The notes beneath the pieces were generated by a model. The model had not been told where the DNA came from. It saw nothing but the letters and a program-made list of their open reading frames with translations, and did no database searches. From Hyphochytrium catenoides (taxonomy: Eukaryota > Protista > Hyphochytriomycota), in NCBI GenBank assembly GCA_900088475.1, contig FLMG01001439.1:1-34573 (forward strand): 34,573 bases of DNA, in the 5' to 3' direction. This document shows positions 14,369 to 34,573 of the stretch, piece by piece (within the stretch, counting starts at the first letter, position 1; each line of letters starts with the position of its first letter). The translations under genes were made by a program, and so were the position numbers.

Positions 14369-14792
14369 AGAAGGAGAGAGAGAGAAGAGAGGGCACAAGA
14401 TAGTGTGGAAAAAGGGATTGCGTCTGTGCCTCTCGCTCGTTTGGAGGGGCCTGAGCGTGCTTCTGCCTGGTCTATATCGGGATATATTATTGGTGGACAA
14501 AGAATTTAGCACGTTCACAAGGAGAGAGCAACGGCTGGGCTAACGAGGGACAGGAAAACAACCCACTTAAAAGTGTGGTGGCTGGGAATACCTCAGGTGG
14601 CGGCAGCTTCATCAAAACAGCAGTCTCGCGTGCCCCTATCAAGAGAAGAGAGACTTGAAGGGGACAAGCGGCAGATTGACGACAAACGGCATAGAGAGAG
14701 GAGAGACAGTGAGAAGCAGACACCCTCAAAGAGATACTGCTACTACCGCACCTACCCAAGCTACAACGCCTTACTGCATAGATTACGGAAGC

Positions 14793-17700
14793 ATGAAGGA
14801 AGTACCTCAGCCGCATGTGACTCCGAATGGCCCCGGCAAGGAGAGTACCTATAGACACAGTGCGCAGAGCAAAAGAGCAAAGAGAGACGGAGACCAAAAG
14901 CAGAGTGATACCAGGAGTTGTGCTCTCTGTCCGAACACCGCCGTGAGTCGGTGTAGCTCCTGCAGATCTGTCTTTTATTGCGGAAGGCAGTGTCAGGCGA
15001 GACACTGGCTTCAAGGTCACAGAGAGGAGTGCCACACGCAGAGAAACTCTGCTCTCTCGTCTTCCGCGCCGTCTCAACCTAAGGCATCAAAGGAGAACGA
15101 CAGTCCTCTTTTGTCTGTCTCCTCTTCTTCTACAAATAAAGAGCAAGACAGAGTGCAGGAGGGCAAGAAGAAGGAGAGAATGAAGACGAAGAAAAAGATG
15201 CAGAAGGACATGTCTTCTCCTACGCTAACCACTGCCTCCTCCCCTCCCTCCTCTAGCACTTTCTCTTCCTCTTGCACGCCCTCAATATCTCCCAGTGGCA
15301 CTCGTAACAGAAAGGAGAGAGAGCGAGAAGGGAGAAAGACCGCAGAAGACGAGAGGCATTTAGCAAGTGAGAGTAAGGCCAGGAAGGAGAAGATTGAGGA
15401 GGTAAGAGAGATCGGCCGAAGGAAAGAGATCCCTCCAAAGAAGCAGGAGAGGAGAGACAACAGAGAGACCAGTAGCCAGCGTCCAACCTCTTCGGAAGGC
15501 AAAGAGCAGAAGATAAAGACGCAGACTATGCAAACTGAGGGAAGACATAAGAACAATGGCATGAGAGGAAAAGGGGCCGGCCAGCGGTGGGTTCAAAAGG
15601 CACCACGACGGGAAGACCCCCAGACAAGCAGGGCTGAGACGGCAACACCAGCAGAGCAGAGCCATCGGAGTGTACAAAGAATAGAAGAAGTCCGAGGGCC
15701 TACTCCTCTTCAAAGATCAAATCCGGCATCTTTGTTATCAAGAGAGAGGGTGAAGTCCTTGGACAGTGGGCAGCGGAGGCGTGAGAAACAGGAATCGAAA
15801 CAGAAGAGAGTAGAAGAAGAGAATGATCCCTTCGAATCCCTTGTGAGCACAGCTTTAAGGAGAAGAAGGGCCGCGTCAGCGCCGTCCAATAGCGCTAAGA
15901 CCGACCCAGACGAGGAGAGAGAAGCTGGACTGCCGGTCGAGCAGACAGATAAGCAACTCGGCAGTGAGGATGGTGTAGATCCTATGGAGAGGGAGAAAGA
16001 ACTCTATGCACCATCGACTTCTACTGCTCTCCCACCCGCTGACGAGGAAATGAAGAAAGAAGACCTTGCGGCTGAGGTAGACGAAGAGAAATCTGACAAG
16101 AACGACTCATCTTCTCTCTCTCTCTGTGCGGAGGATGAGGATCCTAGTGCCCCTAACCTGGCAGAAGAAAGTGCCTCCCCTCTCGTCCCCTTTTCCGAGG
16201 CTAGAGAGGAGGAAGTCAGGGACGAAGAGAGAAGAGATAGTCACGCAGAAAAGGTACCGGAGCCACAGGTTGATAAAGAAAAAGAGATCCCGTCTCCAGC
16301 ACCTCCTCCTGTTCACTCTCCCAGGTACATCGTAACCGGTTTTCTTGACGACCCTCTTGCCTGCAAATCTGAAGAGGAAGAAGACCAAGGAAGAGACATT
16401 GAGGAGACATTAAAAGTGGAAGTAGAGATGAAGGCAAACGTAGAGACTGTGGAGCCGGAGGAGGCTGGTGCGGCAGCAAGGAAGCGAAAGAAGAAGAAGA
16501 AGAAGAGAGGAAAGAAGATTGTGAGGAAGACCATTCAATGGGGAGATGTGACGGTTCGAGAGTTCGAGAGAGTCAATGGAGGCGGAGGAGGTGTGCCGCT
16601 CTACGGCAGCTGGTCTCTTGGTTTGGGAAAGGCGAAGAGGAACTTCTCTCCTGGATCTGTTGATCAGGTGGAAGAGAGAAGGAAATGGGACCTGGAGAGA
16701 AGGGCCGAGAGACTCTCTCCTGCACTGAAGAAGCTCGCCAACGGGGAGACAAGGCAGTTTGACTACATAGTAAGCAAGAAGAACCCTCTTTTTGGCCCTC
16801 TTTTGGAAGGTGAGAGAGAGAAGCTTCTCGTGGAGAGCCTCAAGAAGCATGAGGAGCATGGAGAGACGACGGAAGCAGCAGTTCCAGGAAGAAGGAAAAG
16901 CCAGACCCATCGCTCTCCTTCTATTAGTGGTGAGAGCTTCGAACTGGGAGAAGTTGCGCTCGACGGAGGAAAGAGCCCAGAGGAAAGAGCAATGCGGGAG
17001 AGAGAGAAGGAAGAGTATGCCGAACTGCACTCTCTTCGAGAGAGTAGGAGAGAGCAGTCTGGCTGCTCCTGCAGCTGGAAGCAGACCAAACCTTCAAAGC
17101 TAAACCTGAAACAGCTGAGAGACGCTTTGAAGGCGAAGGGCCTGTCTACGACGGGCACCAAGGCGGACTTAGTGGCCAGACTCAAGGCAGAGCTTAGTAG
17201 TGCAGGTAGGGCTGACACGTATCCACGATCGTTGTATGAGCTCTTTGAAAGCTTTGGCTGGATCTTTCATGCTAGGTTATCTCTCATCTTATCCTTCTCG
17301 TTGTCCTTAGCACCCTCACTTTTGCCCTGTTTAGAAGTATTCTGGCTGTCCCTCTTCTCTTTCTCTCTCTCCTCTGTCGCTCTCTCTCGCTTCCTTTTCC
17401 TTCATTCGGTCTCTCGCCTCTCCCTCGTTCCTCTTCCACATCATGACCACCGTCCACTGTCAGTCCTTGACACACTCGACGCTCTACTTGTGTTGCAGGA
17501 AGCGATCAGACGTCTCTCTGTTCAGGAAAGGGCCAAGCCTGTGAATGTGAAGAGGCAGGCATTCCCTGTCATTATCTAGTCTGTCACTGCTGCCACGGGA
17601 ACACGCAGACCTGCAGCAATCCTATGGGACACTCGCACTACAGCGCAGAGAAGGTGAAGAGCTATAGAAAGTCAATCTTTGCCGCACTGAGGAAGAAGAT

Positions 17701-27676: not shown

Positions 27677-29922
27677 ATGGGAAAGTCCAAGGGACATCTC
27701 AATCCGGCGGATGCCTACCGGAAAGAACTCAAGAAGAAGGTGTGAGCCCTGCAAACTAGGCCTTGTCGTCTACCCTGCCTCCTTCTTCTTCCAAGCATGC
27801 ACTGGTGCACTGACGAGGAGGACAATGTAGGAGATCAAGAAGAATAAGAAGGAGAGGCAACAAAAGCGCGAGATGACCGGTTTCATCAAGAATCCAGACT
27901 CAATGAAGGAGGAAATAGACAAGATCACAGCTCTAGAAGATAAAGGAAAAGCAGACATTAAGCAGATCAAGAGGAAAGAGTTTGTAAGTGTCCGTTCCTC
28001 TCACTACAAGCCGGAGCTGACGTCCGTCTTTTTGATCCATCCTCTCTCTCTTTGTCCTCTTTCACTTTCGGTCTCATTTACAATGTCTTGCTTCTCGTTC
28101 CTGCTGCCCTGACACACACACACACACACACTCTCTCTCTCTCCCTTTCTCTCTTTCTGTTTCTCTCTCTCTCATTTTGCTATATCCTTCTTCTAACAGT
28201 TGCTGGAAGCCTACGCCGCAGTGCTCAGAACTAAGAAGACTGTGAGTATCAGAGAGAAGGTCTACATAAGTTGAGAAGATGATGTGTTAGCGCCAGGCGA
28301 GAAGAGCAGGAAGAAAGAGTAGAGAGAAAGCGACGGAGTGAGCGCGTGAAATAGAGACTGTGAATCAGGAAGAGTGACAGAGAGAGAGAGAGAGAATAGA
28401 GAGAACTAGAGAAGTGAGGGAAGGCCGGAAGGTAATNNNNNNNNNNNNNNNNNNNNNNNNNNNNNNNNNNNNNNNNNNNNNNNNNNNNNNNNNNNNNNNN
28501 AAGCAGAGAGCACGTCGGCGCCTCCTCTCTCTGCAGAGCCTTATGCAGCTCAAGCCCCTCGGGTAGGGCAAGAATCCACTTATAGTTCGCCTCTGTCTCT
28601 CTCCTGCCAACGTCTTTCCTGTTTGCTCAACCTTCTCTCCCGTACTCCACGCCGCACGTCTCAATGCCTATAGTACGGCATTCCTTTTCTCTCTCTCTGT
28701 CTCGTTCTCGTCTCCCGCTCTTCCCTCTCGGCCTCTCGCTCTTCTCTCCCTCTGCCTCGCTTCTGCCTTCTCTCCTATTCTCTGTTCTGTGTACATTCTG
28801 TCTTTGCTCTGTCTGATTTCCCCTCGTTTAGAAGACGCTCAATATTCTCCCTGCCTATCATGTTATCTTCTCTTGTCCCTGACTAATTCACTCTATCTGC
28901 TCCTGTTAATCTCTTGTCCCTTCCTTTCTCTCCCTCCACTCTATCTCTCAAAACTTTCACACTCCTAGGGCGTCGGACACTATGGCCCGGGGCCCGCTTA
29001 CTATGGAATAACTCCTGGCGTGCCTCCGCCGCCGCCGCGAGGTTTCTCCCCTGGTCTTCCGCCGCCGCCGCCGCCTAGAGGCTACCCACCGGGGTTTCCG
29101 CCCCCACCACCTCCACTTGGAGGGCCATTTCCTCCTCCTCGTGCCTTTGCCCCAGGCTTTCCTCCGCCTCCTCCTCCTCCGCGACCGCCTCTCGGCCCTG
29201 GAGGCTATACGCCTCCGCCACCACCTCGAGGATTGCCGCCCGGTGTGCCTCCTCCCCCGCCTGGACCTCCGCCGCTGGGAGCTAGAAGGGAACAGACACC
29301 ACTTGGAGCCTTTCCCTCAGCAGGTTGAAAAAGCGATAGTCTATTCGTGTCCCCTGTCTCTGCTCACCTCCCCACTGTTGGTTGCTCTTATTCTTCTTGT
29401 GGGATTCTCTGTGTTTCTCTCTCTCTTTGCTTCTGGTTTCCTACGTTTGACTGCGTTCATTCTTCCCCATCTCTACTGTTTTGCGACGTTTCTCTCTTTT
29501 CCTGCTGTTGAAGAAGAGCTTAAGAGCTTTTCCCCGTGTGATTGTTCGTAACCTGTTCACTAACTGTTCCTCTGTCTCGCTCCTTTCATTTGCCAACTGC
29601 TCTAGGAACTGCCACTTCTTCGCACCCATCAGAGCCTAGAGCCGTCCCCCGTCCTTCGCTCTCTCTCGCCCCATCACCAATCCCTGCCAAGCCATCACCC
29701 GCTATTACGACGGACAAAGAGCTGGTCTCTTTAGTGCCTGCCGCTCTCCGCGTAAGACGGTCACAACCAGCAAAGAAGACATCAGTCAAAACCGCTTCTC
29801 TTTCTTCCTCTTCTCCCTCCCCAGCTCCTGTCCCTGCCGCACCGACAACATCATCTTCGTCATCTGTTAGCTCACACTACGATGCATTCATGGAAGAGAT
29901 GAGAAAGTTAGGTGCGCTCTGA
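27677..29922 (+). CDS. WBP11: WW domain-binding protein 11 (splicing factor) homolog
   Basis: N-terminus MGKSKGHLNPADAYRKELKKK|EIKKNKKERQQKRE. Poly-proline exon 28969-29323. C-terminus LVSLVPAALRVRR...YDAFMEEMRKLGAL*. Exons 27677-27739, 27831-27983, 28200-28240, an exon ending ~28562 whose start lies in the gap, 28969-29323, 29606-29922. Confidence 0.92.
28437..28500. other. Assembly gap (N run) inside WBP11
   Basis: 64 N. Confidence 1.
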
Positions 29923-30215
29923 ACCGGCCCGGGAGCTAGTATTTAGGGTTATTTATTCAATGTCTTCCTTTGTAAAATGGGGTTTAACGAGAGAATGACA
30001 CAGTTCGACCGCTGGCTGGGGTCTGACAAGTAAAGACTAGCGTTATTCCTCTCACGCAATTCTTCCCGCTATGAAGGGAAAGCCCATGAGGAATGGGAGA
30101 AAGGAGAGAGGAAAGAGATTGATTGCCTTACTTTCCCCAATATGTCGAGGATTTGCGATGGTGTTCGCGAAACGCAAGGAGAGAGAGAGAGAGAGAATGG
30201 CTTGCAGTGGGAGGA

Positions 30216-33200
30216 CTAGTGATCAAGCAGCTGCTCCACTTCCCTAATGTATCCTTCCATGGCCCATTCTCGTGACAAACCCTGGTCAATAAAGCAAAGA
30301 TAAAGGATTTTGTGAGAGGAAGAGAATCTTGAAAAGGCTAAAGGTTAGAACAGGATCAAGAGAGTCAAGACAATGAAGCGCCGCGCAGAAAGAGATGGAT
30401 AGGAGGGGAAGTAGCGAGAAAAGAAAGAGACAGAGCGGCTGACCTTCAAGCTATCCCAGGCGTCCCACTTCATTCTTTCTTTAGGAGCGAACATTCCTGG
30501 CCTTCGTCCTTGACAATCGCCAACCGTCGCCTATATAAAGGCGTTATGCCATGGAATTGGGGCCCAAAAGAAGGTGGAAAGGAAGAAAGAAGGGGCACAG
30601 AGAAGGGCTTCCATATAAAGACAATATTTGAATAATACAAAGAAGGTCATACTGAGTAGAGAAGAAGAAGTGTGACAGAAAGCAAAGCAGTAACTCGAGA
30701 AGAGAAAGAAAGTCTTAGAGTCGGGGCAGTACTACCATCTATAGAGTAGTGCTATATGAACAGCAGAGGGAGAGGAGAGCAGACACGGGGAGAGGGAGCA
30801 AACACGGGGAGGGAGAGAAAGAGGATAGCGGGTTCAGGCAGCGCACCTGCTTGTACAATCCATACAATCGGAGCAACACTTCTGCTGGCGGTGTCGGGCC
30901 ATTTGAGCGCTAGATGGGAACGATACCATGAGAACCCAGGCTTCCTGGACTGTCTCCAAAGAGGTATATGGGAAATGAAAGGCGCCAAGGGCAGTACCAG
31001 AAAAGAGAAAGAGCGGTAAACCGAAGAATGAAGAGCCAGAGATAATAGCCAAACTCTCCATGATCCCTCGTAGAAAGACATCTTTATAAGCCGTCTTCCA
31101 AGGGAATAGAAGCTCAAAAGAAAGAGCTTGACTGCAGACTGAGCTTACAAGGAGAATAAGAAGAAGAGGAGAGCTGTGCGCATCAAACAGGCTCTGGCAG
31201 GCAGAAAAGAGAGAGAGAGTGTGCGTGTGTGTTACTTGTCCTTGTGGGAGAGAGAGTAAGAGAGAGGATAAAGCCAGAACAGTGCTATGGAGAACGTAGG
31301 AGAGAGAGAAGAGTGGACCTTGACCCTCTCTGCAGCGTCCTCAAAGTCGTCTTCTAGTGTCCTCTGTCCTGCTATGACGACGTCTTCCACCTGCTGCCCC
31401 ACCCAGAGTTCTCCCTCGCCCTGATGTACCAGGTTTTGCCCCATAAAGACCTCTCCTGCGAACTCTCCAGCCAAGCCTAGTGCCTCGCCCGTCCTGCAGT
31501 GAAGCATATGTGGTGAGAGGGAGAGAGAGAGACAGAGCGGAGACAGAGAAAGAGACAGAAAGGGAAAAGTGTGTGTGTGAGAGAGACAGAGGCCCTGTTA
31601 CCTAAAACGTAGATGCGGTCAGAGGAAGGCAAGGCCATGGTAATAATAATCACATTTTGGGAAGAGACCCGCCACACGAAGAAGAAAGAGAGAGAGAGTA
31701 GCAAACAGTAAAAATAGAACAGTGAAGAACAGCCAAGAAAGGAAGAAGAAAGCACCTGAATTCCTTTAGAACGCGAGTGACGTCCACGCTTTGGTCCTTT
31801 TCTCCTCTCTCTTGATCAATCCCAGGCACAGAGCAGCGGCTGCACGGCTTAACCACAGAGAACGAAAGAGGGCCAATGCGAAGGCGCTTCCACGTATCTT
31901 CAGAGAAGGGAGAAGATACTCCTTTTACGACAATGCTAGAGTGGAGAGAAGAAGAGAGACGAGAGCCAAAGAGTTAGAGAGAGACACACACCCTGGCACA
32001 GCAGGGTGAACGGCCGAGAGAGGAGATAAAGAGGAGAGGAGAGGGAGAGAAGGAGAAAGAGAAACACTACTATCCGTGTCCAGGAGAAGTCATTCTACAG
32101 AGCCACACTAAGCTCGCAGAGGCGTCCTTAAGAGAAGCAGCGCCAGCCCTTCTGCTGGCGCTGGAAGGAACAGTCACGAAGGAAAGAGACTGAGTGGGAG
32201 ACTTTTAGTAAGGAGTAGGAGACCGTACTTTGGTCTAAAACGGTAAGGCGTGAGAGAGCACTGGCCTTTCCGGTTGAACTCATCGACGGACTCCTCAGAA
32301 AGTATCAAAAACGGAAAACCGTCCGCAAAACCTAAGCAATGAACGGTGCGGGAAAGAAGAGGAAGATGAGACAGCGCAAGCAGGGCAAGATTCCGCAAGT
32401 AGCCCAAGAACTTAGGAAGAGACAACACGATGCAGGAGACGAAATCGTAGAGAGAGAGAGAGAAAGAGAGCCAGCGACAGAGACACGAAGAATAGCAAAG
32501 AGATAATGAAGAGGTAGCCACAACGGTCTATGTTCCAGACATAAGACAGACGCAGGCCGAGTAGCGAGGCAACTATTAGAAGCAAGAAGAAAGAGCCATT
32601 GGGCCCGCGGACAACACCTTTTATCCCCAGAAAAGAAGCAGAACGCGCACAGCGAAGAGTAGAGTCACCAACTAGACAACCAAAGAGACTGAAGAGAGAG
32701 AGAGAGTCATGGCTACCTTTCCCCCAAGAAAAAAAGAGACAGTAAGGAAGAAAGGGGACTCAGACCTGTCTCTCCTTGAGGCGGCCTCTTGGCGTCTGTG
32801 GGGCGTACAAACCGTGGGTCAAACCTCACAAGGCGGCACCCTTCCGCCCACCTTCTGCCCTCTTCCCCGTCACTCTCTCTCTTTCCTCCACTTAAGAACG
32901 ATCTGAACCACTCTGCGGCTCTCTCTCCCTCATCGATAGCCTCGCATTCGTCTTTCCAGACTTTGACCAGACAGCAGTTGTCGTCTGTGGGCGGGGAAGG
33001 ACGGAGGATAAGGGGCTCTTGACCTGGGGCTCTAAACGTTATGGTCTGAGCCGGAAAGAGAGAGAGAGAGAGAAAGAAAACAAAAAGAAAGAATGGTGTT
33101 AGCTTCGAAACTGCAAAGAGAGAAACGAACTTCGTTCAGTAGACAACGGGATCTTAGAGCTGCTCCTGCTGGTGGTGACAAAGAGCGAGTAGAGACACGA

Positions 33201-33615
33201 GACAGAGAGACCCAAGGAGCGATAGAGAGACCCAAAGAGCGATAGAGAGACCCAAAGAGCGATGGAGAGAGGACAGATAAGCAAGCGTGCGCGCGAGAGA
33301 GAGAGAGCGAGAGAGAGAGAGAGAGAGAAAGAAAGAAGGCAGAGAGGAAATACGTGTGCTCTTGTCTCTCTCTTCTTCCTCACCACTTGGCCATCATCTT
33401 CTTCTTCTATGGAGGGCTCGATCAGCGCCATCTTCGGTAGTTTCCGCTGTGTTAAGAAGCGATAGTTGCTGTCCACCAGCAACCACTCCCGGTCGTACTT
33501 TAGTCCTCGCTCTAAGAGAGACGGAAGACGAGAAGAGGAAGAGAACACACGGGTGAGAGAGACAGACAGAGAGAATTGGAGAGTGAGGAGGAAGAGAGAG
33601 TAAGAGAGTAAGAGA

Positions 33616-33653
<38 letters not shown>

Positions 33654-34171
33654 TAATAGATGGACAAAGAAGCCCTTAGCCGACTAAAGGGGAGGACCGA
33701 GGTGACGCTGACATGGGAAGAAGAGAGACAAATGGAAAGCGGGAGACGGAGAAGGAACTTAGGAAAGTAGGGAGTTAAACAGAGACATGGCAAGAGAGAA
33801 GAGAGACCGGGAGGGAAGGACTGGCGGCTCTTACTTGTCACCTCAGCGCGCTGCAGCTGTATCCCCTTCGCTGACTTCAAAGGGTAGATCCAAAGCTGAG
33901 AGAGAAAGGGACCATCTTGCCTCTCTCCCTGGACCATCTCTCCTTTCTCTTTACCTTGGTCTGCAGGATCTGCCGTCTCTCTCTGTTGCTCTTTGTCTCT
34001 CCTCTCCACATCAAAGGAAGAGATGACGTTTCTCTTCCTCGGTACATGGAGAGAGGCATCCAGCTGGTGCTGGTCCTTAGCAATGAGGTAGGAGCGAATG
34101 ATGAGAAGAATTGCAAGGCCTCCGAAGAGAGAGAGAAAGAGAATGGCGTTGTCTGTCGCCACATAATGTCC
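30216..34171 (-). CDS. mARC/MOSC-family molybdoenzyme (TM-MOSC_N-MOSC) fused to a C-terminal acyl-CoA-binding (ACBP) domain; 5' end not resolved
   Basis: Exons 34171-33835, 33511-33384, 33045-32766, 32331-32229, 31935-31756, 31493-31319, 30909-30847, 30530-30444, 30281-30216, all GT-AG and phase-consistent. TM: AILFLSLFGGLAILLII. MOSC motifs: LWIYPLKSAKG, DREWLLVD, FLTQR, AAEWF, FADGFPFLI, RFRPNIVV, FSEDTW, KPCSRC, FMGQNL. ACBP motifs: FEDAAERVK, LYGLYKQATVGD, PGM, KWDAW, GLSREWAMEGYI. Confidence 0.9.
33204..33263. repeat. Intronic 20-bp minisatellite x3 (agagagacccaaagagcgat)
   Basis: Three adjacent copies with one substitution. Confidence 0.92.
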
Positions 34172-34573
34172 CTGCAAGATGGAAACAGTTGTGCGTGGAT
34201 GTATTAGACACATAAATAAGAGAGAGAGAGATATATAAACCCCAAGCAGAGACAAAACACTGGGTGGAAGAAGGGGACAGGAGAGAAAGCAAGAGAGAGA
34301 GAGAGAGAGAGAGAGAGGGACCAACATGTCCAGCATAAAAGTGGAGGAAAGACAAGATAGGAGGTGGGACCTTTTCAGACAACAGGACAGAAGCTGCAGA
34401 AATGTGGCTTGGCGCCAGAGAGTGCTCAAAGAGAGGCGAATGGCTGAAGATGATGAGAAAGAGAAAGAGAGAGAGAGAGAGAGAAAGAGAATCATTACGC
34501 TACCCCTAAAAAGAAAGGCTTTCCCAGAAGTTGTCCCTGGAACTGCGGTCCGACCTCTAAAGTTTGGCGGTAC

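What the first reader, a model, noticed from the sequence alone, without database searches (positions are those of the whole stretch)
30216..34171. mARC/MOSC molybdoenzyme fused to an intact acyl-CoA-binding (ACBP) domain
Seen: the end of MOSC (GQNL...GELWVGQQV) and the first ACBP helix (LEDDFEDAAERVK) lie in ONE exon (31493-31319) with no stop. Three small phase-0 exons (30909-30847, 30530-30444, 30281-30216), invisible in the ORF track, complete the ACBP domain with its ligand-binding residues (LYGLYKQATVGD, KWDAW, AM..YI). The Mo-ligating Cys motif (PCSRC), RFRPN and an N-terminal TM anchor are retained. Known: mARC/YcbX enzymes reduce N-hydroxylated substrates with cytochrome b5/b5 reductase, or with a fused ferredoxin in YcbX. 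Human MTARC1 variants influence liver fat by an unresolved mechanism. ACBP domains bind long-chain acyl-CoA. I do not know of a MOSC-ACBP fusion. Inference: this is a Rosetta-stone link suggesting that a membrane-anchored Moco reductase acts on, or is regulated by, acyl-CoA/lipid species.
Basis: partly seen in the sequence, partly recalled or inferred. Interest (0 to 1): 0.9.

Follow-up and report, generated by a model that had tools for sequence, protein, structure and literature searches.

The report
mARC-type molybdoenzyme fused to ACBP domain
One nine-exon protist gene appears to join a membrane-anchored, mARC-like molybdenum reductase to a complete acyl-CoA-binding domain, a combination I could not find in any other organism or paper, which gives a testable physical link between this enzyme family and lipid metabolism, though no RNA data were available to prove the join.

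Summary
On the minus strand, nine GT-AG exons (34171/34213 to 30216) give one open frame of 472 aa, or 486 aa from the in-frame ATG at 34213. The order is hydrophobic N-terminal anchor, MOSC_N, MOSC, a linker of about 6 residues, then ACBP. Exon-by-exon Pfam hits run in order and meet exactly at exon borders (MOSC_N 4-26/29-65/68-117; MOSC 6-39/41-86; ACBP 17-32/33-61). The MOSC part aligns end to end with 265 homologues and keeps 44 of 49 strongly conserved residues, including both Cys of PCSRC. The end of MOSC and ACBP helix 1 share exon 6, and no in-frame Met lies between them. All introns are 67-80% pyrimidine on the sense strand; all exons, the three small ACBP exons included, are 34-56%. 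Two independent DNA runs confirm the assembly. No RNA run was listed, so splicing is inferred. None of the 265 fetched MOSC homologues (best 45% identity) nor the 49 fetched loci carries ACBP. No paper pairs the two domains, and a 2023 mARC review does not list this architecture. Verdict: probably a real, lineage-restricted new domain architecture. The functional inference rests on one lineage, in a genome where the scan has noted other ACBP fusions on other DNA.

The parts
34172..34213 (-). Possible 5' extension with the nearest in-frame start codon (ATG 34213-34211). The alternative is a splice acceptor at 34172/34171 with an unseen upstream exon.
   Evidence: The frame stays open upstream of 34171 (ORF 33512-34495). 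Translation from 34213 is given. The start is not established.
33835..34171 (-). Exon 1: hydrophobic anchor (A23-I44, 34147-34082), a charged spacer of about 60 aa, and the first MOSC_N strand (LSQLWIYPLKS from 33904).
   Evidence: (best 19-residue hydropathy windows at residues 21-26). Pfam MOSC_N positions 4-26, E 6e-4. Donor gtaaga.
33384..33511 (-). Exon 2: MOSC_N middle part.
   Evidence: Pfam MOSC_N 29-65, E 4.9e-9. Aligns in order with homologues.
32766..33045 (-). Exon 3: MOSC_N end plus the inter-domain linker.
   Evidence: Pfam MOSC_N 68-117, E 6.8e-5; alignment A1.
32229..32331 (-). Exon 4: MOSC start (FADGFPF ... RFRP-).
   Evidence: Pfam MOSC 6-39. RFRPN is completed across the exon 4/5 border.
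31756..31935 (-). Exon 5: MOSC core with PCSRC (31847-31833).
   Evidence: Pfam MOSC 41-86, E 4.9e-9. CSRC aligns with CSRC of human mARC1 structures 6FW2/7P41. 1108 library hits at E<=0.001.
31319..31493 (-). Exon 6, the fusion exon: last MOSC strands (to about 31376), linker IAGQRT (31375-31358), ACBP helix 1 LEDDFEDAAERVK (31357-31319).
   Evidence: One frame, no stop. The MOSC part aligns to the C-termini of homologues. DNA contigs of two runs span 30827-31505.
30847..30909 (-). Exon 7: ACBP helix 2 (..LLRLYGLYKQ), phase 0.
   Evidence: Pfam ACBP 17-32, E 0.01. tag acceptor and gt donor. 48% pyrimidine against 67% and 72% in the flanking introns.
30444..30530 (-). Exon 8: ACBP loop and helix 3 (ATVGD...KWDAW), phase 0.
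   Evidence: Pfam ACBP 33-61, 36.5 bits, E 5.6e-9. 17 solved ACBP-domain structures at E<=0.01, best 7e-7.
30216..30281 (-). Exon 9: ACBP helix 4 (..AMEGYIREVEQLLDH) and stop TAG (30218-30216).
   Evidence: Too short to score alone. Assigned by position, frame and the A-x-x-x-Y-I pattern.

Best explanation
This is a single protein-coding gene of a stramenopile-like protist. It encodes an N-terminally membrane-anchored mARC-type MOSC_N-MOSC molybdenum-cofactor reductase whose last beta-strands run, after a linker of about 6 residues, into a complete four-helix acyl-CoA-binding (ACBP) domain. Shown: the frame, the exon structure, the domain identities, and retention of the family's conserved residues in both halves. 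Inferred by homology with mARC: the enzyme sits on a membrane with its catalytic part in the cytosol, binds Moco through the CxxC cysteine motif, takes electrons from cytochrome b5 and NADH-b5 reductase, and reduces an N-oxygenated substrate. Inferred from the fusion: the ACBP domain binds long-chain acyl-CoA next to the catalytic domain. My preferred reading is that it couples the reductase to the local acyl-CoA pool as a sensor or tether. For example, it could gate how much of the shared b5 electron supply this enzyme draws, relative to acyl-CoA desaturases. I rate direct catalysis on acyl-CoA itself as less likely.
For: Nine GT-AG exons give one 1419-nt frame. Exon-wise Pfam hits are in order and abut at exon borders. 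The MOSC part aligns end to end with homologues at E about 1e-60 to 1e-75, and every exon junction falls on conserved motifs. 44 of 49 columns conserved in >=80% of 192 homologues are kept, including DR, FRPN, ED-W and C-R-C. CSRC aligns with human mARC1. ACBP exon 8 scores above the Pfam cut-off and hits solved ACBPs. The Y-K-Q, K-W and Y ligand-site motifs are present. No in-frame Met lies between M374 (inside MOSC) and M449 (inside ACBP helix 3), so a complete ACBP can only be made through exon 6. Introns are 67-80% pyrimidine on the sense strand and exons 34-56%, the ACBP exons included. Differences from the contigs of the two DNA runs are 12 synonymous to 4 non-synonymous in exons, and all 6 indels are intronic. 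Contigs of both DNA runs cover the fusion exon together with exon 7 and intron 6; the X1 contig also covers exons 5 and 4. The closest homologues also carry N-terminal hydrophobic anchors. Published background: the b5R/b5 relay feeds both mARC1 and stearoyl-CoA desaturase (PMC13655723), and the mARC-lipid link is unexplained (PMC10637980).
Against: No RNA run was listed and no spliced read was seen, so the use of introns 6-8 is inferred. No relative with the same fusion was found, so there is no evolutionary conservation of the join. The closest MOSC homologue is only 45% identical, so close relatives were simply not available to test. Helix 1 and helix 4 of ACBP have no stand-alone statistical support. 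The start codon is unproven. The functional coupling is speculation from architecture.
Confidence: 0.75

Rival explanations
1. Alternative products: the main mRNA retains intron 6 or ends in it. That gives a MOSC-only protein ending 32 residues after ...ERVK at the stop at 31232. The ACBP exons would be joined only in a minor isoform, or used from an internal promoter.
For: The exon 6 frame does stay open for 29 codons into intron 6 (ORF 31232-31507). The donor gtccac is weak. No RNA data exclude this.
Against: ACBP helix 1 is kept in frame inside exon 6 and would be pointless without exons 7-9. There is no in-frame Met to start a complete stand-alone ACBP. Other donors in this gene are equally weak (gtctga, gtacgg, gtgctt). 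Intron 6 has intron-like composition and carries frame-breaking indel differences (+1 at 30927, -3 at 31084).
Confidence: 0.15
2. The ACBP exons are a decaying remnant of a former neighbouring ACBP gene and are no longer expressed. The in-frame helix 1 is a coincidence.
For: Only one sequence difference lies in the ACBP exons, and it is non-synonymous (W to G at 30266). There is no conservation in other species.
Against: All three small exons keep an open frame, canonical splice sites, phase 0 and the ligand-site motifs. Exon 8 alone scores above the Pfam cut-off. The profile positions abut exactly at the exon 7/8 border.
Confidence: 0.06
3. Assembly artefact: two unrelated loci were joined in the window.
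For: None found.
Against: Contigs from two separate DNA runs (2011 and 2017) are colinear with the window across 30827-31505. The X1 contig continues to 32620 and the X2 contig to 31835. The join itself lies inside one exon.
Confidence: 0.02

Closest known systems
Eukaryotic mARC / ARC (MTARC1, MTARC2, plant and Chlamydomonas ARC)
   Same: N-terminal hydrophobic anchor, MOSC_N plus MOSC, the conserved cysteine motif, and the FRPN and ED-W motifs. Presumably the same cytochrome b5 / b5 reductase electron supply.
   Different: Known mARC proteins end after the MOSC domain. This one carries a C-terminal ACBP domain. The 2023 JBC review of the family lists no such architecture.
Bacterial YcbX (MOSC_N-MOSC-[2Fe-2S] ferredoxin) and YiiM (MOSC plus a C-terminal three-helix domain)
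   Same: An extra small domain is fused directly to the C-terminus of MOSC. This shows that the position tolerates a partner domain close to the active site.
   Different: The partner there is an electron carrier or a three-helix bundle. Here it is a lipid-ligand-binding four-helix ACBP. Architectures as described in PMC10637980.
Multi-domain ACBP proteins (ECI2/PECI = ACBP + enoyl-CoA isomerase; ACBD4/5 membrane-anchored; ACBD6 with ankyrin repeats)
   Same: An ACBP module joined to an enzyme or a membrane anchor, where it is thought to supply or sense acyl-CoA. PDB matches include ACBD4, ACBD5 and the PECI ACBP domain.
   Different: In those proteins ACBP is usually N-terminal and the partner acts on acyl-CoA. 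Here it is C-terminal and the partner is a molybdoenzyme with no known acyl-CoA chemistry. The comparison of architectures rests on my own knowledge.

Membership tests
mARC-like MOSC proteins (MOSC_N + MOSC) | MOSC_N beta-barrel domain | tested here: met
   Pfam PF03476 positions 4-26, 29-65 and 68-117 on exons 1-3, in order. Exon 2 alone scores 36.5 bits against a cut-off of 25.
mARC-like MOSC proteins (MOSC_N + MOSC) | MOSC domain with the conserved cysteine that ligates Mo | tested here: met
   PF03473 positions 6-39 and 41-86. C328 and C331 sit in columns that are 99-100% Cys in 192 homologues. CSRC aligns with human mARC1.
mARC-like MOSC proteins (MOSC_N + MOSC) | Family-wide conserved residues retained (likely active enzyme) | tested here: met
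   44 of 49 columns conserved at >=80% are identical. The five differences are conservative or peripheral (I/L, V/L, F/L, P/M, M/F).
mARC-like MOSC proteins (MOSC_N + MOSC) | N-terminal membrane anchor | tested here: inconclusive
   A hydrophobic 22-mer lies at residues 23-44 counted from ATG 34213, and homologues have similar anchors. The true start codon and the target membrane are unknown.
mARC-like MOSC proteins (MOSC_N + MOSC) | Moco binding and b5/b5R-dependent N-reduction | not testable with these tools
   Needs recombinant protein.
ACBP domain (PF00887) | Profile match above the curated cut-off | tested here: met
   Exon 8 alone scores 36.5 bits against a cut-off of 28.3. Exon 7 adds 16.4 bits on the adjoining profile positions. 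The whole spliced domain could not be submitted, because it has no reference.
ACBP domain (PF00887) | Ligand-site residues (Tyr/Lys of helix 2, Lys of helix 3, Tyr of helix 4) | tested here: met
   LYGLYKQ, KWDAW and AMEGYI are present. Exon 8 aligns residue for residue with rice, yeast and bovine ACBP structures. Which residues bind ligand is from my knowledge of bovine ACBP.
ACBP domain (PF00887) | All four helices present | tested here: inconclusive
   Helices 2 and 3 have statistical support. Helix 1 (exon 6 tail) and helix 4 (exon 9) fit by position and pattern only.
ACBP domain (PF00887) | Binds acyl-CoA | not testable with these tools
   Needs ITC or a binding assay.
Single fused gene product | One mRNA joining exons 5-6-7-8-9 | not testable with these tools
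   No RNA run was listed. The runs that hold the locus are genomic DNA with no joints.

The most novel reading that the evidence does not exclude
The fusion records a real functional coupling that also holds, unfused, in animals. On this reading mARC-type reductases work on or are gated by the long-chain acyl-CoA pool. Either acyl-CoA controls their draw on the cytochrome b5 electron supply shared with acyl-CoA desaturases, or they reduce N-oxygenated acyl derivatives such as fatty hydroxamates formed from acyl-CoA. This protist protein would then be the first natural handle on why MTARC1 variants change liver fat.
Probability: 0.15. Interest if true: 0.85.

Novelty: new variant of a known kind. 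Interest (0 to 1): 0.6.

Why it matters
The link between mARC enzymes and lipid metabolism is an acknowledged open question. The 2023 family review asks whether mARC homologues of algae, plants or bacteria are also tied to lipids (PMC10637980). MTARC1 is also a drug target for fatty liver disease. A natural protein that joins a mARC-type catalytic core to an acyl-CoA-binding module makes one hypothesis directly testable: does acyl-CoA change the reductase activity or partner choice of a MOSC enzyme? It also adds a domain architecture that published surveys of MOSC or molybdoenzyme fusions do not list. The weight is limited, because the fusion was seen in one lineage only, without transcript proof, in a genome that seems to attach ACBP to several unrelated proteins.

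Tried and rejected
RNA evidence: the search for RNA runs listed none. A search of any kind listed only genomic DNA runs and tiny runs that do not hold the locus. Laying them gave no joints.

The window's own annotated protein: a search with the 327-aa open stretch around exon 1 found nothing.

Fusion relatives:
- Exon 5 against 1.84 billion representatives gave 1108 hits. None of the best 150 has ACBP.
- A profile of five homologues plus the window's exons gave 6091 hits, of which only the best 120 are shown. None has PF00887 or an ACBP match.
- The fusion exon alone found nothing in the protein collection or in metagenome contigs.
- Exon 5 fetched 48 metagenome loci. The only ACBP-like hit (L018) lies antisense inside a GTPase gene of a high-GC bacterium and is spurious.
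- The contig of the closest homologue (P0152, 45% identity) has no ACBP.
- The Atlas feature search with exon 6 returned noise.

Short ACBP pieces (exons 7 and 9, and the exon 6 tail) are not detectable alone against the PDB.

Not done: Pfam, homologue search and AlphaFold on the full spliced protein. A spliced sequence has no reference and long sequences may not be typed, so the geometry of the ACBP pocket relative to the Moco site is unknown.

Rejected: assembly chimera, and a stand-alone ACBP gene starting in intron 6. The ATGs there open other frames or non-ACBP peptides (my reading).
Full report
**What is in the sequence.** I read the minus strand from 34573 to 30000 and assembled the exons by their borders. 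This gives nine exons:
- 34171-33835
- 33511-33384
- 33045-32766
- 32331-32229
- 31935-31756
- 31493-31319
- 30909-30847
- 30530-30444
- 30281-30216

Every intron starts with GT and ends with AG. The joined coding sequence is 1419 nt, in one frame, and ends at TAG 30218-30216. Exon 1 as given has no in-frame Met. The frame stays open upstream, and the nearest ATG is at 34213, which would give a 486-residue protein. Residue numbers below count from that Met. The start is not proven.

**Domain identities.** A spliced protein has no reference, so I scanned each exon separately against Pfam. The hits are in order and meet at the exon borders:
- MOSC_N profile positions 4-26 (exon 1), 29-65 (exon 2) and 68-117 (exon 3)
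- MOSC 6-39 (exon 4) and 41-86 (exon 5)
- ACBP 17-32 (exon 7, E 0.01) and 33-61 (exon 8, 36.5 bits, E 5.6e-9, above the 28.3-bit cut-off)

Exon 8 alone also matches 17 solved ACBP-domain structures (rice, yeast, bovine, ACBD4, ACBD5, PECI), best E 7e-7, at chain positions about 34-62. Exon 5 aligns its CSRC with the CSRC of human mARC1 (6FW2, 7P41). Exon 9 and the last 21 residues of exon 6 are too short to score alone. I assign them to ACBP helices 4 and 1 by position, frame and pattern (A-M-E-G-Y-I; F-E-D-A-A-E-R-V-K).

**The MOSC half is a complete and probably active enzyme.** Run locally, the spliced model aligns end to end with full-length homologues, for example residues 90-379 of the 472-aa model against 7-265 of a 268-aa protein, at E 1e-60 to 1e-75. 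In a MAFFT alignment with five eukaryote-type homologues, each exon piece lands in order and each junction falls on a conserved motif: T-K-R-G-L, FADGFPF, RFRPN|IVV and KEFR|TG. I also aligned 192 homologues of 255-380 aa. Of the 49 columns that are at least 80% conserved, the model matches 44. These include D133-R134, R149, R250, D266, F294-R295-P296-N297, E309-D310, W312, C328, R330, C331 and R357. The closest homologues also start with a hydrophobic anchor, like the A23-I44 stretch here.

**The join.**
- Homology to MOSC proteins ends at about V395/V396 (WVGQQVEDVV, 31405-31376).
- Six residues follow (IAGQRT).
- ACBP helix 1 starts at L403 (31357) and fills the rest of exon 6.
- The in-frame Mets are at residues 1, 93, 154, 374, 449, 456 and 473.

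No translation start can therefore give a complete stand-alone ACBP. Only the fused frame supplies helix 1 and helix 2. If intron 6 were retained, the protein would end 32 residues later at the stop at 31232, carrying an orphan helix 1.

**Independent support for the exon-intron model.**
- On the sense strand all eight introns are 67-80% pyrimidine, and all nine exons are 34-56%. Exons 7, 8 and 9 (48, 36 and 38%) sit between introns of 67, 72 and 75%.
- Contigs of two DNA runs from 2011 and 2017 are colinear with the window across 30827-31505. The X1 contig continues to 32620 and the X2 contig to 31835, so the locus is not an assembly chimera.
- These contigs differ from the window at about 1% of sites. 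In exons the differences are 12 synonymous to 4 non-synonymous.
- All six indels lie in the predicted introns, including a +1 at 30927 and a -3 at 31084 in intron 6.
- The one difference in the ACBP exons is W to G at a position I believe to be variable (30266).

**What is missing.** No RNA run was listed for the locus. The second search listed only genomic DNA runs and tiny runs that do not hold the locus, and no joints were seen. Splicing of introns 6-8 is therefore inferred, not observed.

**Is the architecture found elsewhere?**
- Exon 5 against 1.84 billion cluster representatives gave 1108 hits at E<=0.001. None of the best 150 has an ACBP motif.
- A profile of five homologues plus the window's exon pieces, run against 5.8 billion proteins, gave 6091 hits. 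The best 120 all carry only PF03473 and PF03476, and none matches the ACBP part by phmmer. Only the best 120 could be inspected.
- The closest homologue is 45% identical (P0152, a Logan contig), and its contig has no ACBP.
- The best named relatives are stramenopiles (Thraustotheca, Aphanomyces, Tribonema, Ochromonas). This fits earlier scan notes that call the genome a stramenopile.
- The fusion exon alone found nothing in proteins or metagenome contigs.
- The 48 metagenome loci fetched with exon 5 contain no real ACBP. The single hit, in L018, is antisense to a bacterial GTPase gene.

Within what I could inspect, the fusion is unique to this lineage. However, no close relatives of the organism are in the collections, so conservation could not be tested.

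**Literature.**
- No paper in the library holds both 'MOSC domain' and 'ACBP', nor ACBP together with domain architecture and molybdenum.
- A 2018 survey of molybdoprotein domain fusions does not mention acyl-CoA binding (PMC6147048).
- The 2023 JBC review lists the known MOSC architectures: YiiM 3-alpha, YcbX ferredoxin with or without FAD, mARC with a TM helix, MOS with NifS, and rare MoaB or XdhC fusions. ACBP is not among them.
- That review states that the mechanism linking mARC to lipid metabolism is unknown. It asks whether homologues in algae, plants or bacteria are also involved (PMC10637980).

**How it most likely works.**
- Shown: one frame, two intact domains, a short linker, and conserved catalytic and ligand-site residues.
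- Inferred from the mARC family: membrane anchoring with a cytosolic catalytic part, Moco bound at the cysteine motif, electrons from b5/b5R, and reduction of an N-oxygenated substrate.
- Inferred from the fusion: acyl-CoA is bound a few residues from the end of the MOSC barrel. This is the same position where YcbX carries its ferredoxin, so a C-terminal partner can plausibly reach the functional face.

I favour a sensor or tether role, in which acyl-CoA tunes activity or the use of the shared b5 supply. I rate acyl-CoA as a substrate lower, because no MOSC chemistry on thioesters is known.

**A caution on specificity.** Other unchecked notes of this scan report ACBP inside RIC1, ACBP fused to a fatty acyl-CoA reductase, and ACBP paired with a pseudo-acyl-CoA synthetase, all in the same genome but on other DNA. 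So the scan has noted ACBP fusions here before, but not this one. ACBP may be a mobile module in this lineage. That weakens the specificity of the Rosetta-stone argument. On the other hand, at least one of those partners uses acyl-CoA.

**Verdict.** This is a new variant of known kinds: a new architecture built from two well-known domains. It is probably real (about 0.75) and of moderate to high interest, because it makes the mARC-lipid question testable in a natural protein.

Noticed in passing
window 30216-34171 (all introns of the gene): Introns are strongly strand-asymmetric: 67-80% pyrimidine on the sense strand, full of CT microsatellites, against 34-56% in exons. This could serve as a cheap cue for exons and strand in this genome.
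   Followed up: partly
window 34164-34162 and 34213-34211: The ATG at 34164 inside exon 1 is out of frame with the MOSC reading frame and opens a 95-aa ORF, 33877-34164. The only nearby in-frame ATG is at 34213. The true start, or an upstream exon beyond the window end, is unresolved.
   Followed up: partly
window 30000-34573 versus runs X1 and X2: About 1% single-base differences and six small indels separate the window from the contigs of the two DNA runs. This points to heterozygosity or a different strain. One difference changes W to G in ACBP helix 4 (30266).
   Followed up: partly
window 14655-17579 (+): A 974-aa open frame carries a MYND zinc finger (residues 89-126) and a SAP domain (814-844). 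It matches another note on this window (s1-360191).
   Followed up: no
window 29542-29922 (+): A convergent open frame ends 293 bp from the ACBP stop. It is Ser/Pro-rich, ends ...YDAFMEEMRKLGAL, and has no Pfam hit. It leaves little room for a separate ACBP promoter on that side.
   Followed up: no
proteins P0001 (611 aa) and P0034 (674 aa): Two database proteins carry two full MOSC_N-MOSC units in tandem.
   Followed up: no
proteins P0190, P0207, P0219, P0226 (Saprolegniales): The oomycete MOSC proteins have an N-terminal extension of about 160 residues with no Pfam domain on record.
   Followed up: no
L018 8498-8608: A weak ACBP-like tblastn hit next to a bacterial MOSC gene lies antisense inside a 364-aa GTPase-like gene. 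It is a false lead.
   Followed up: yes
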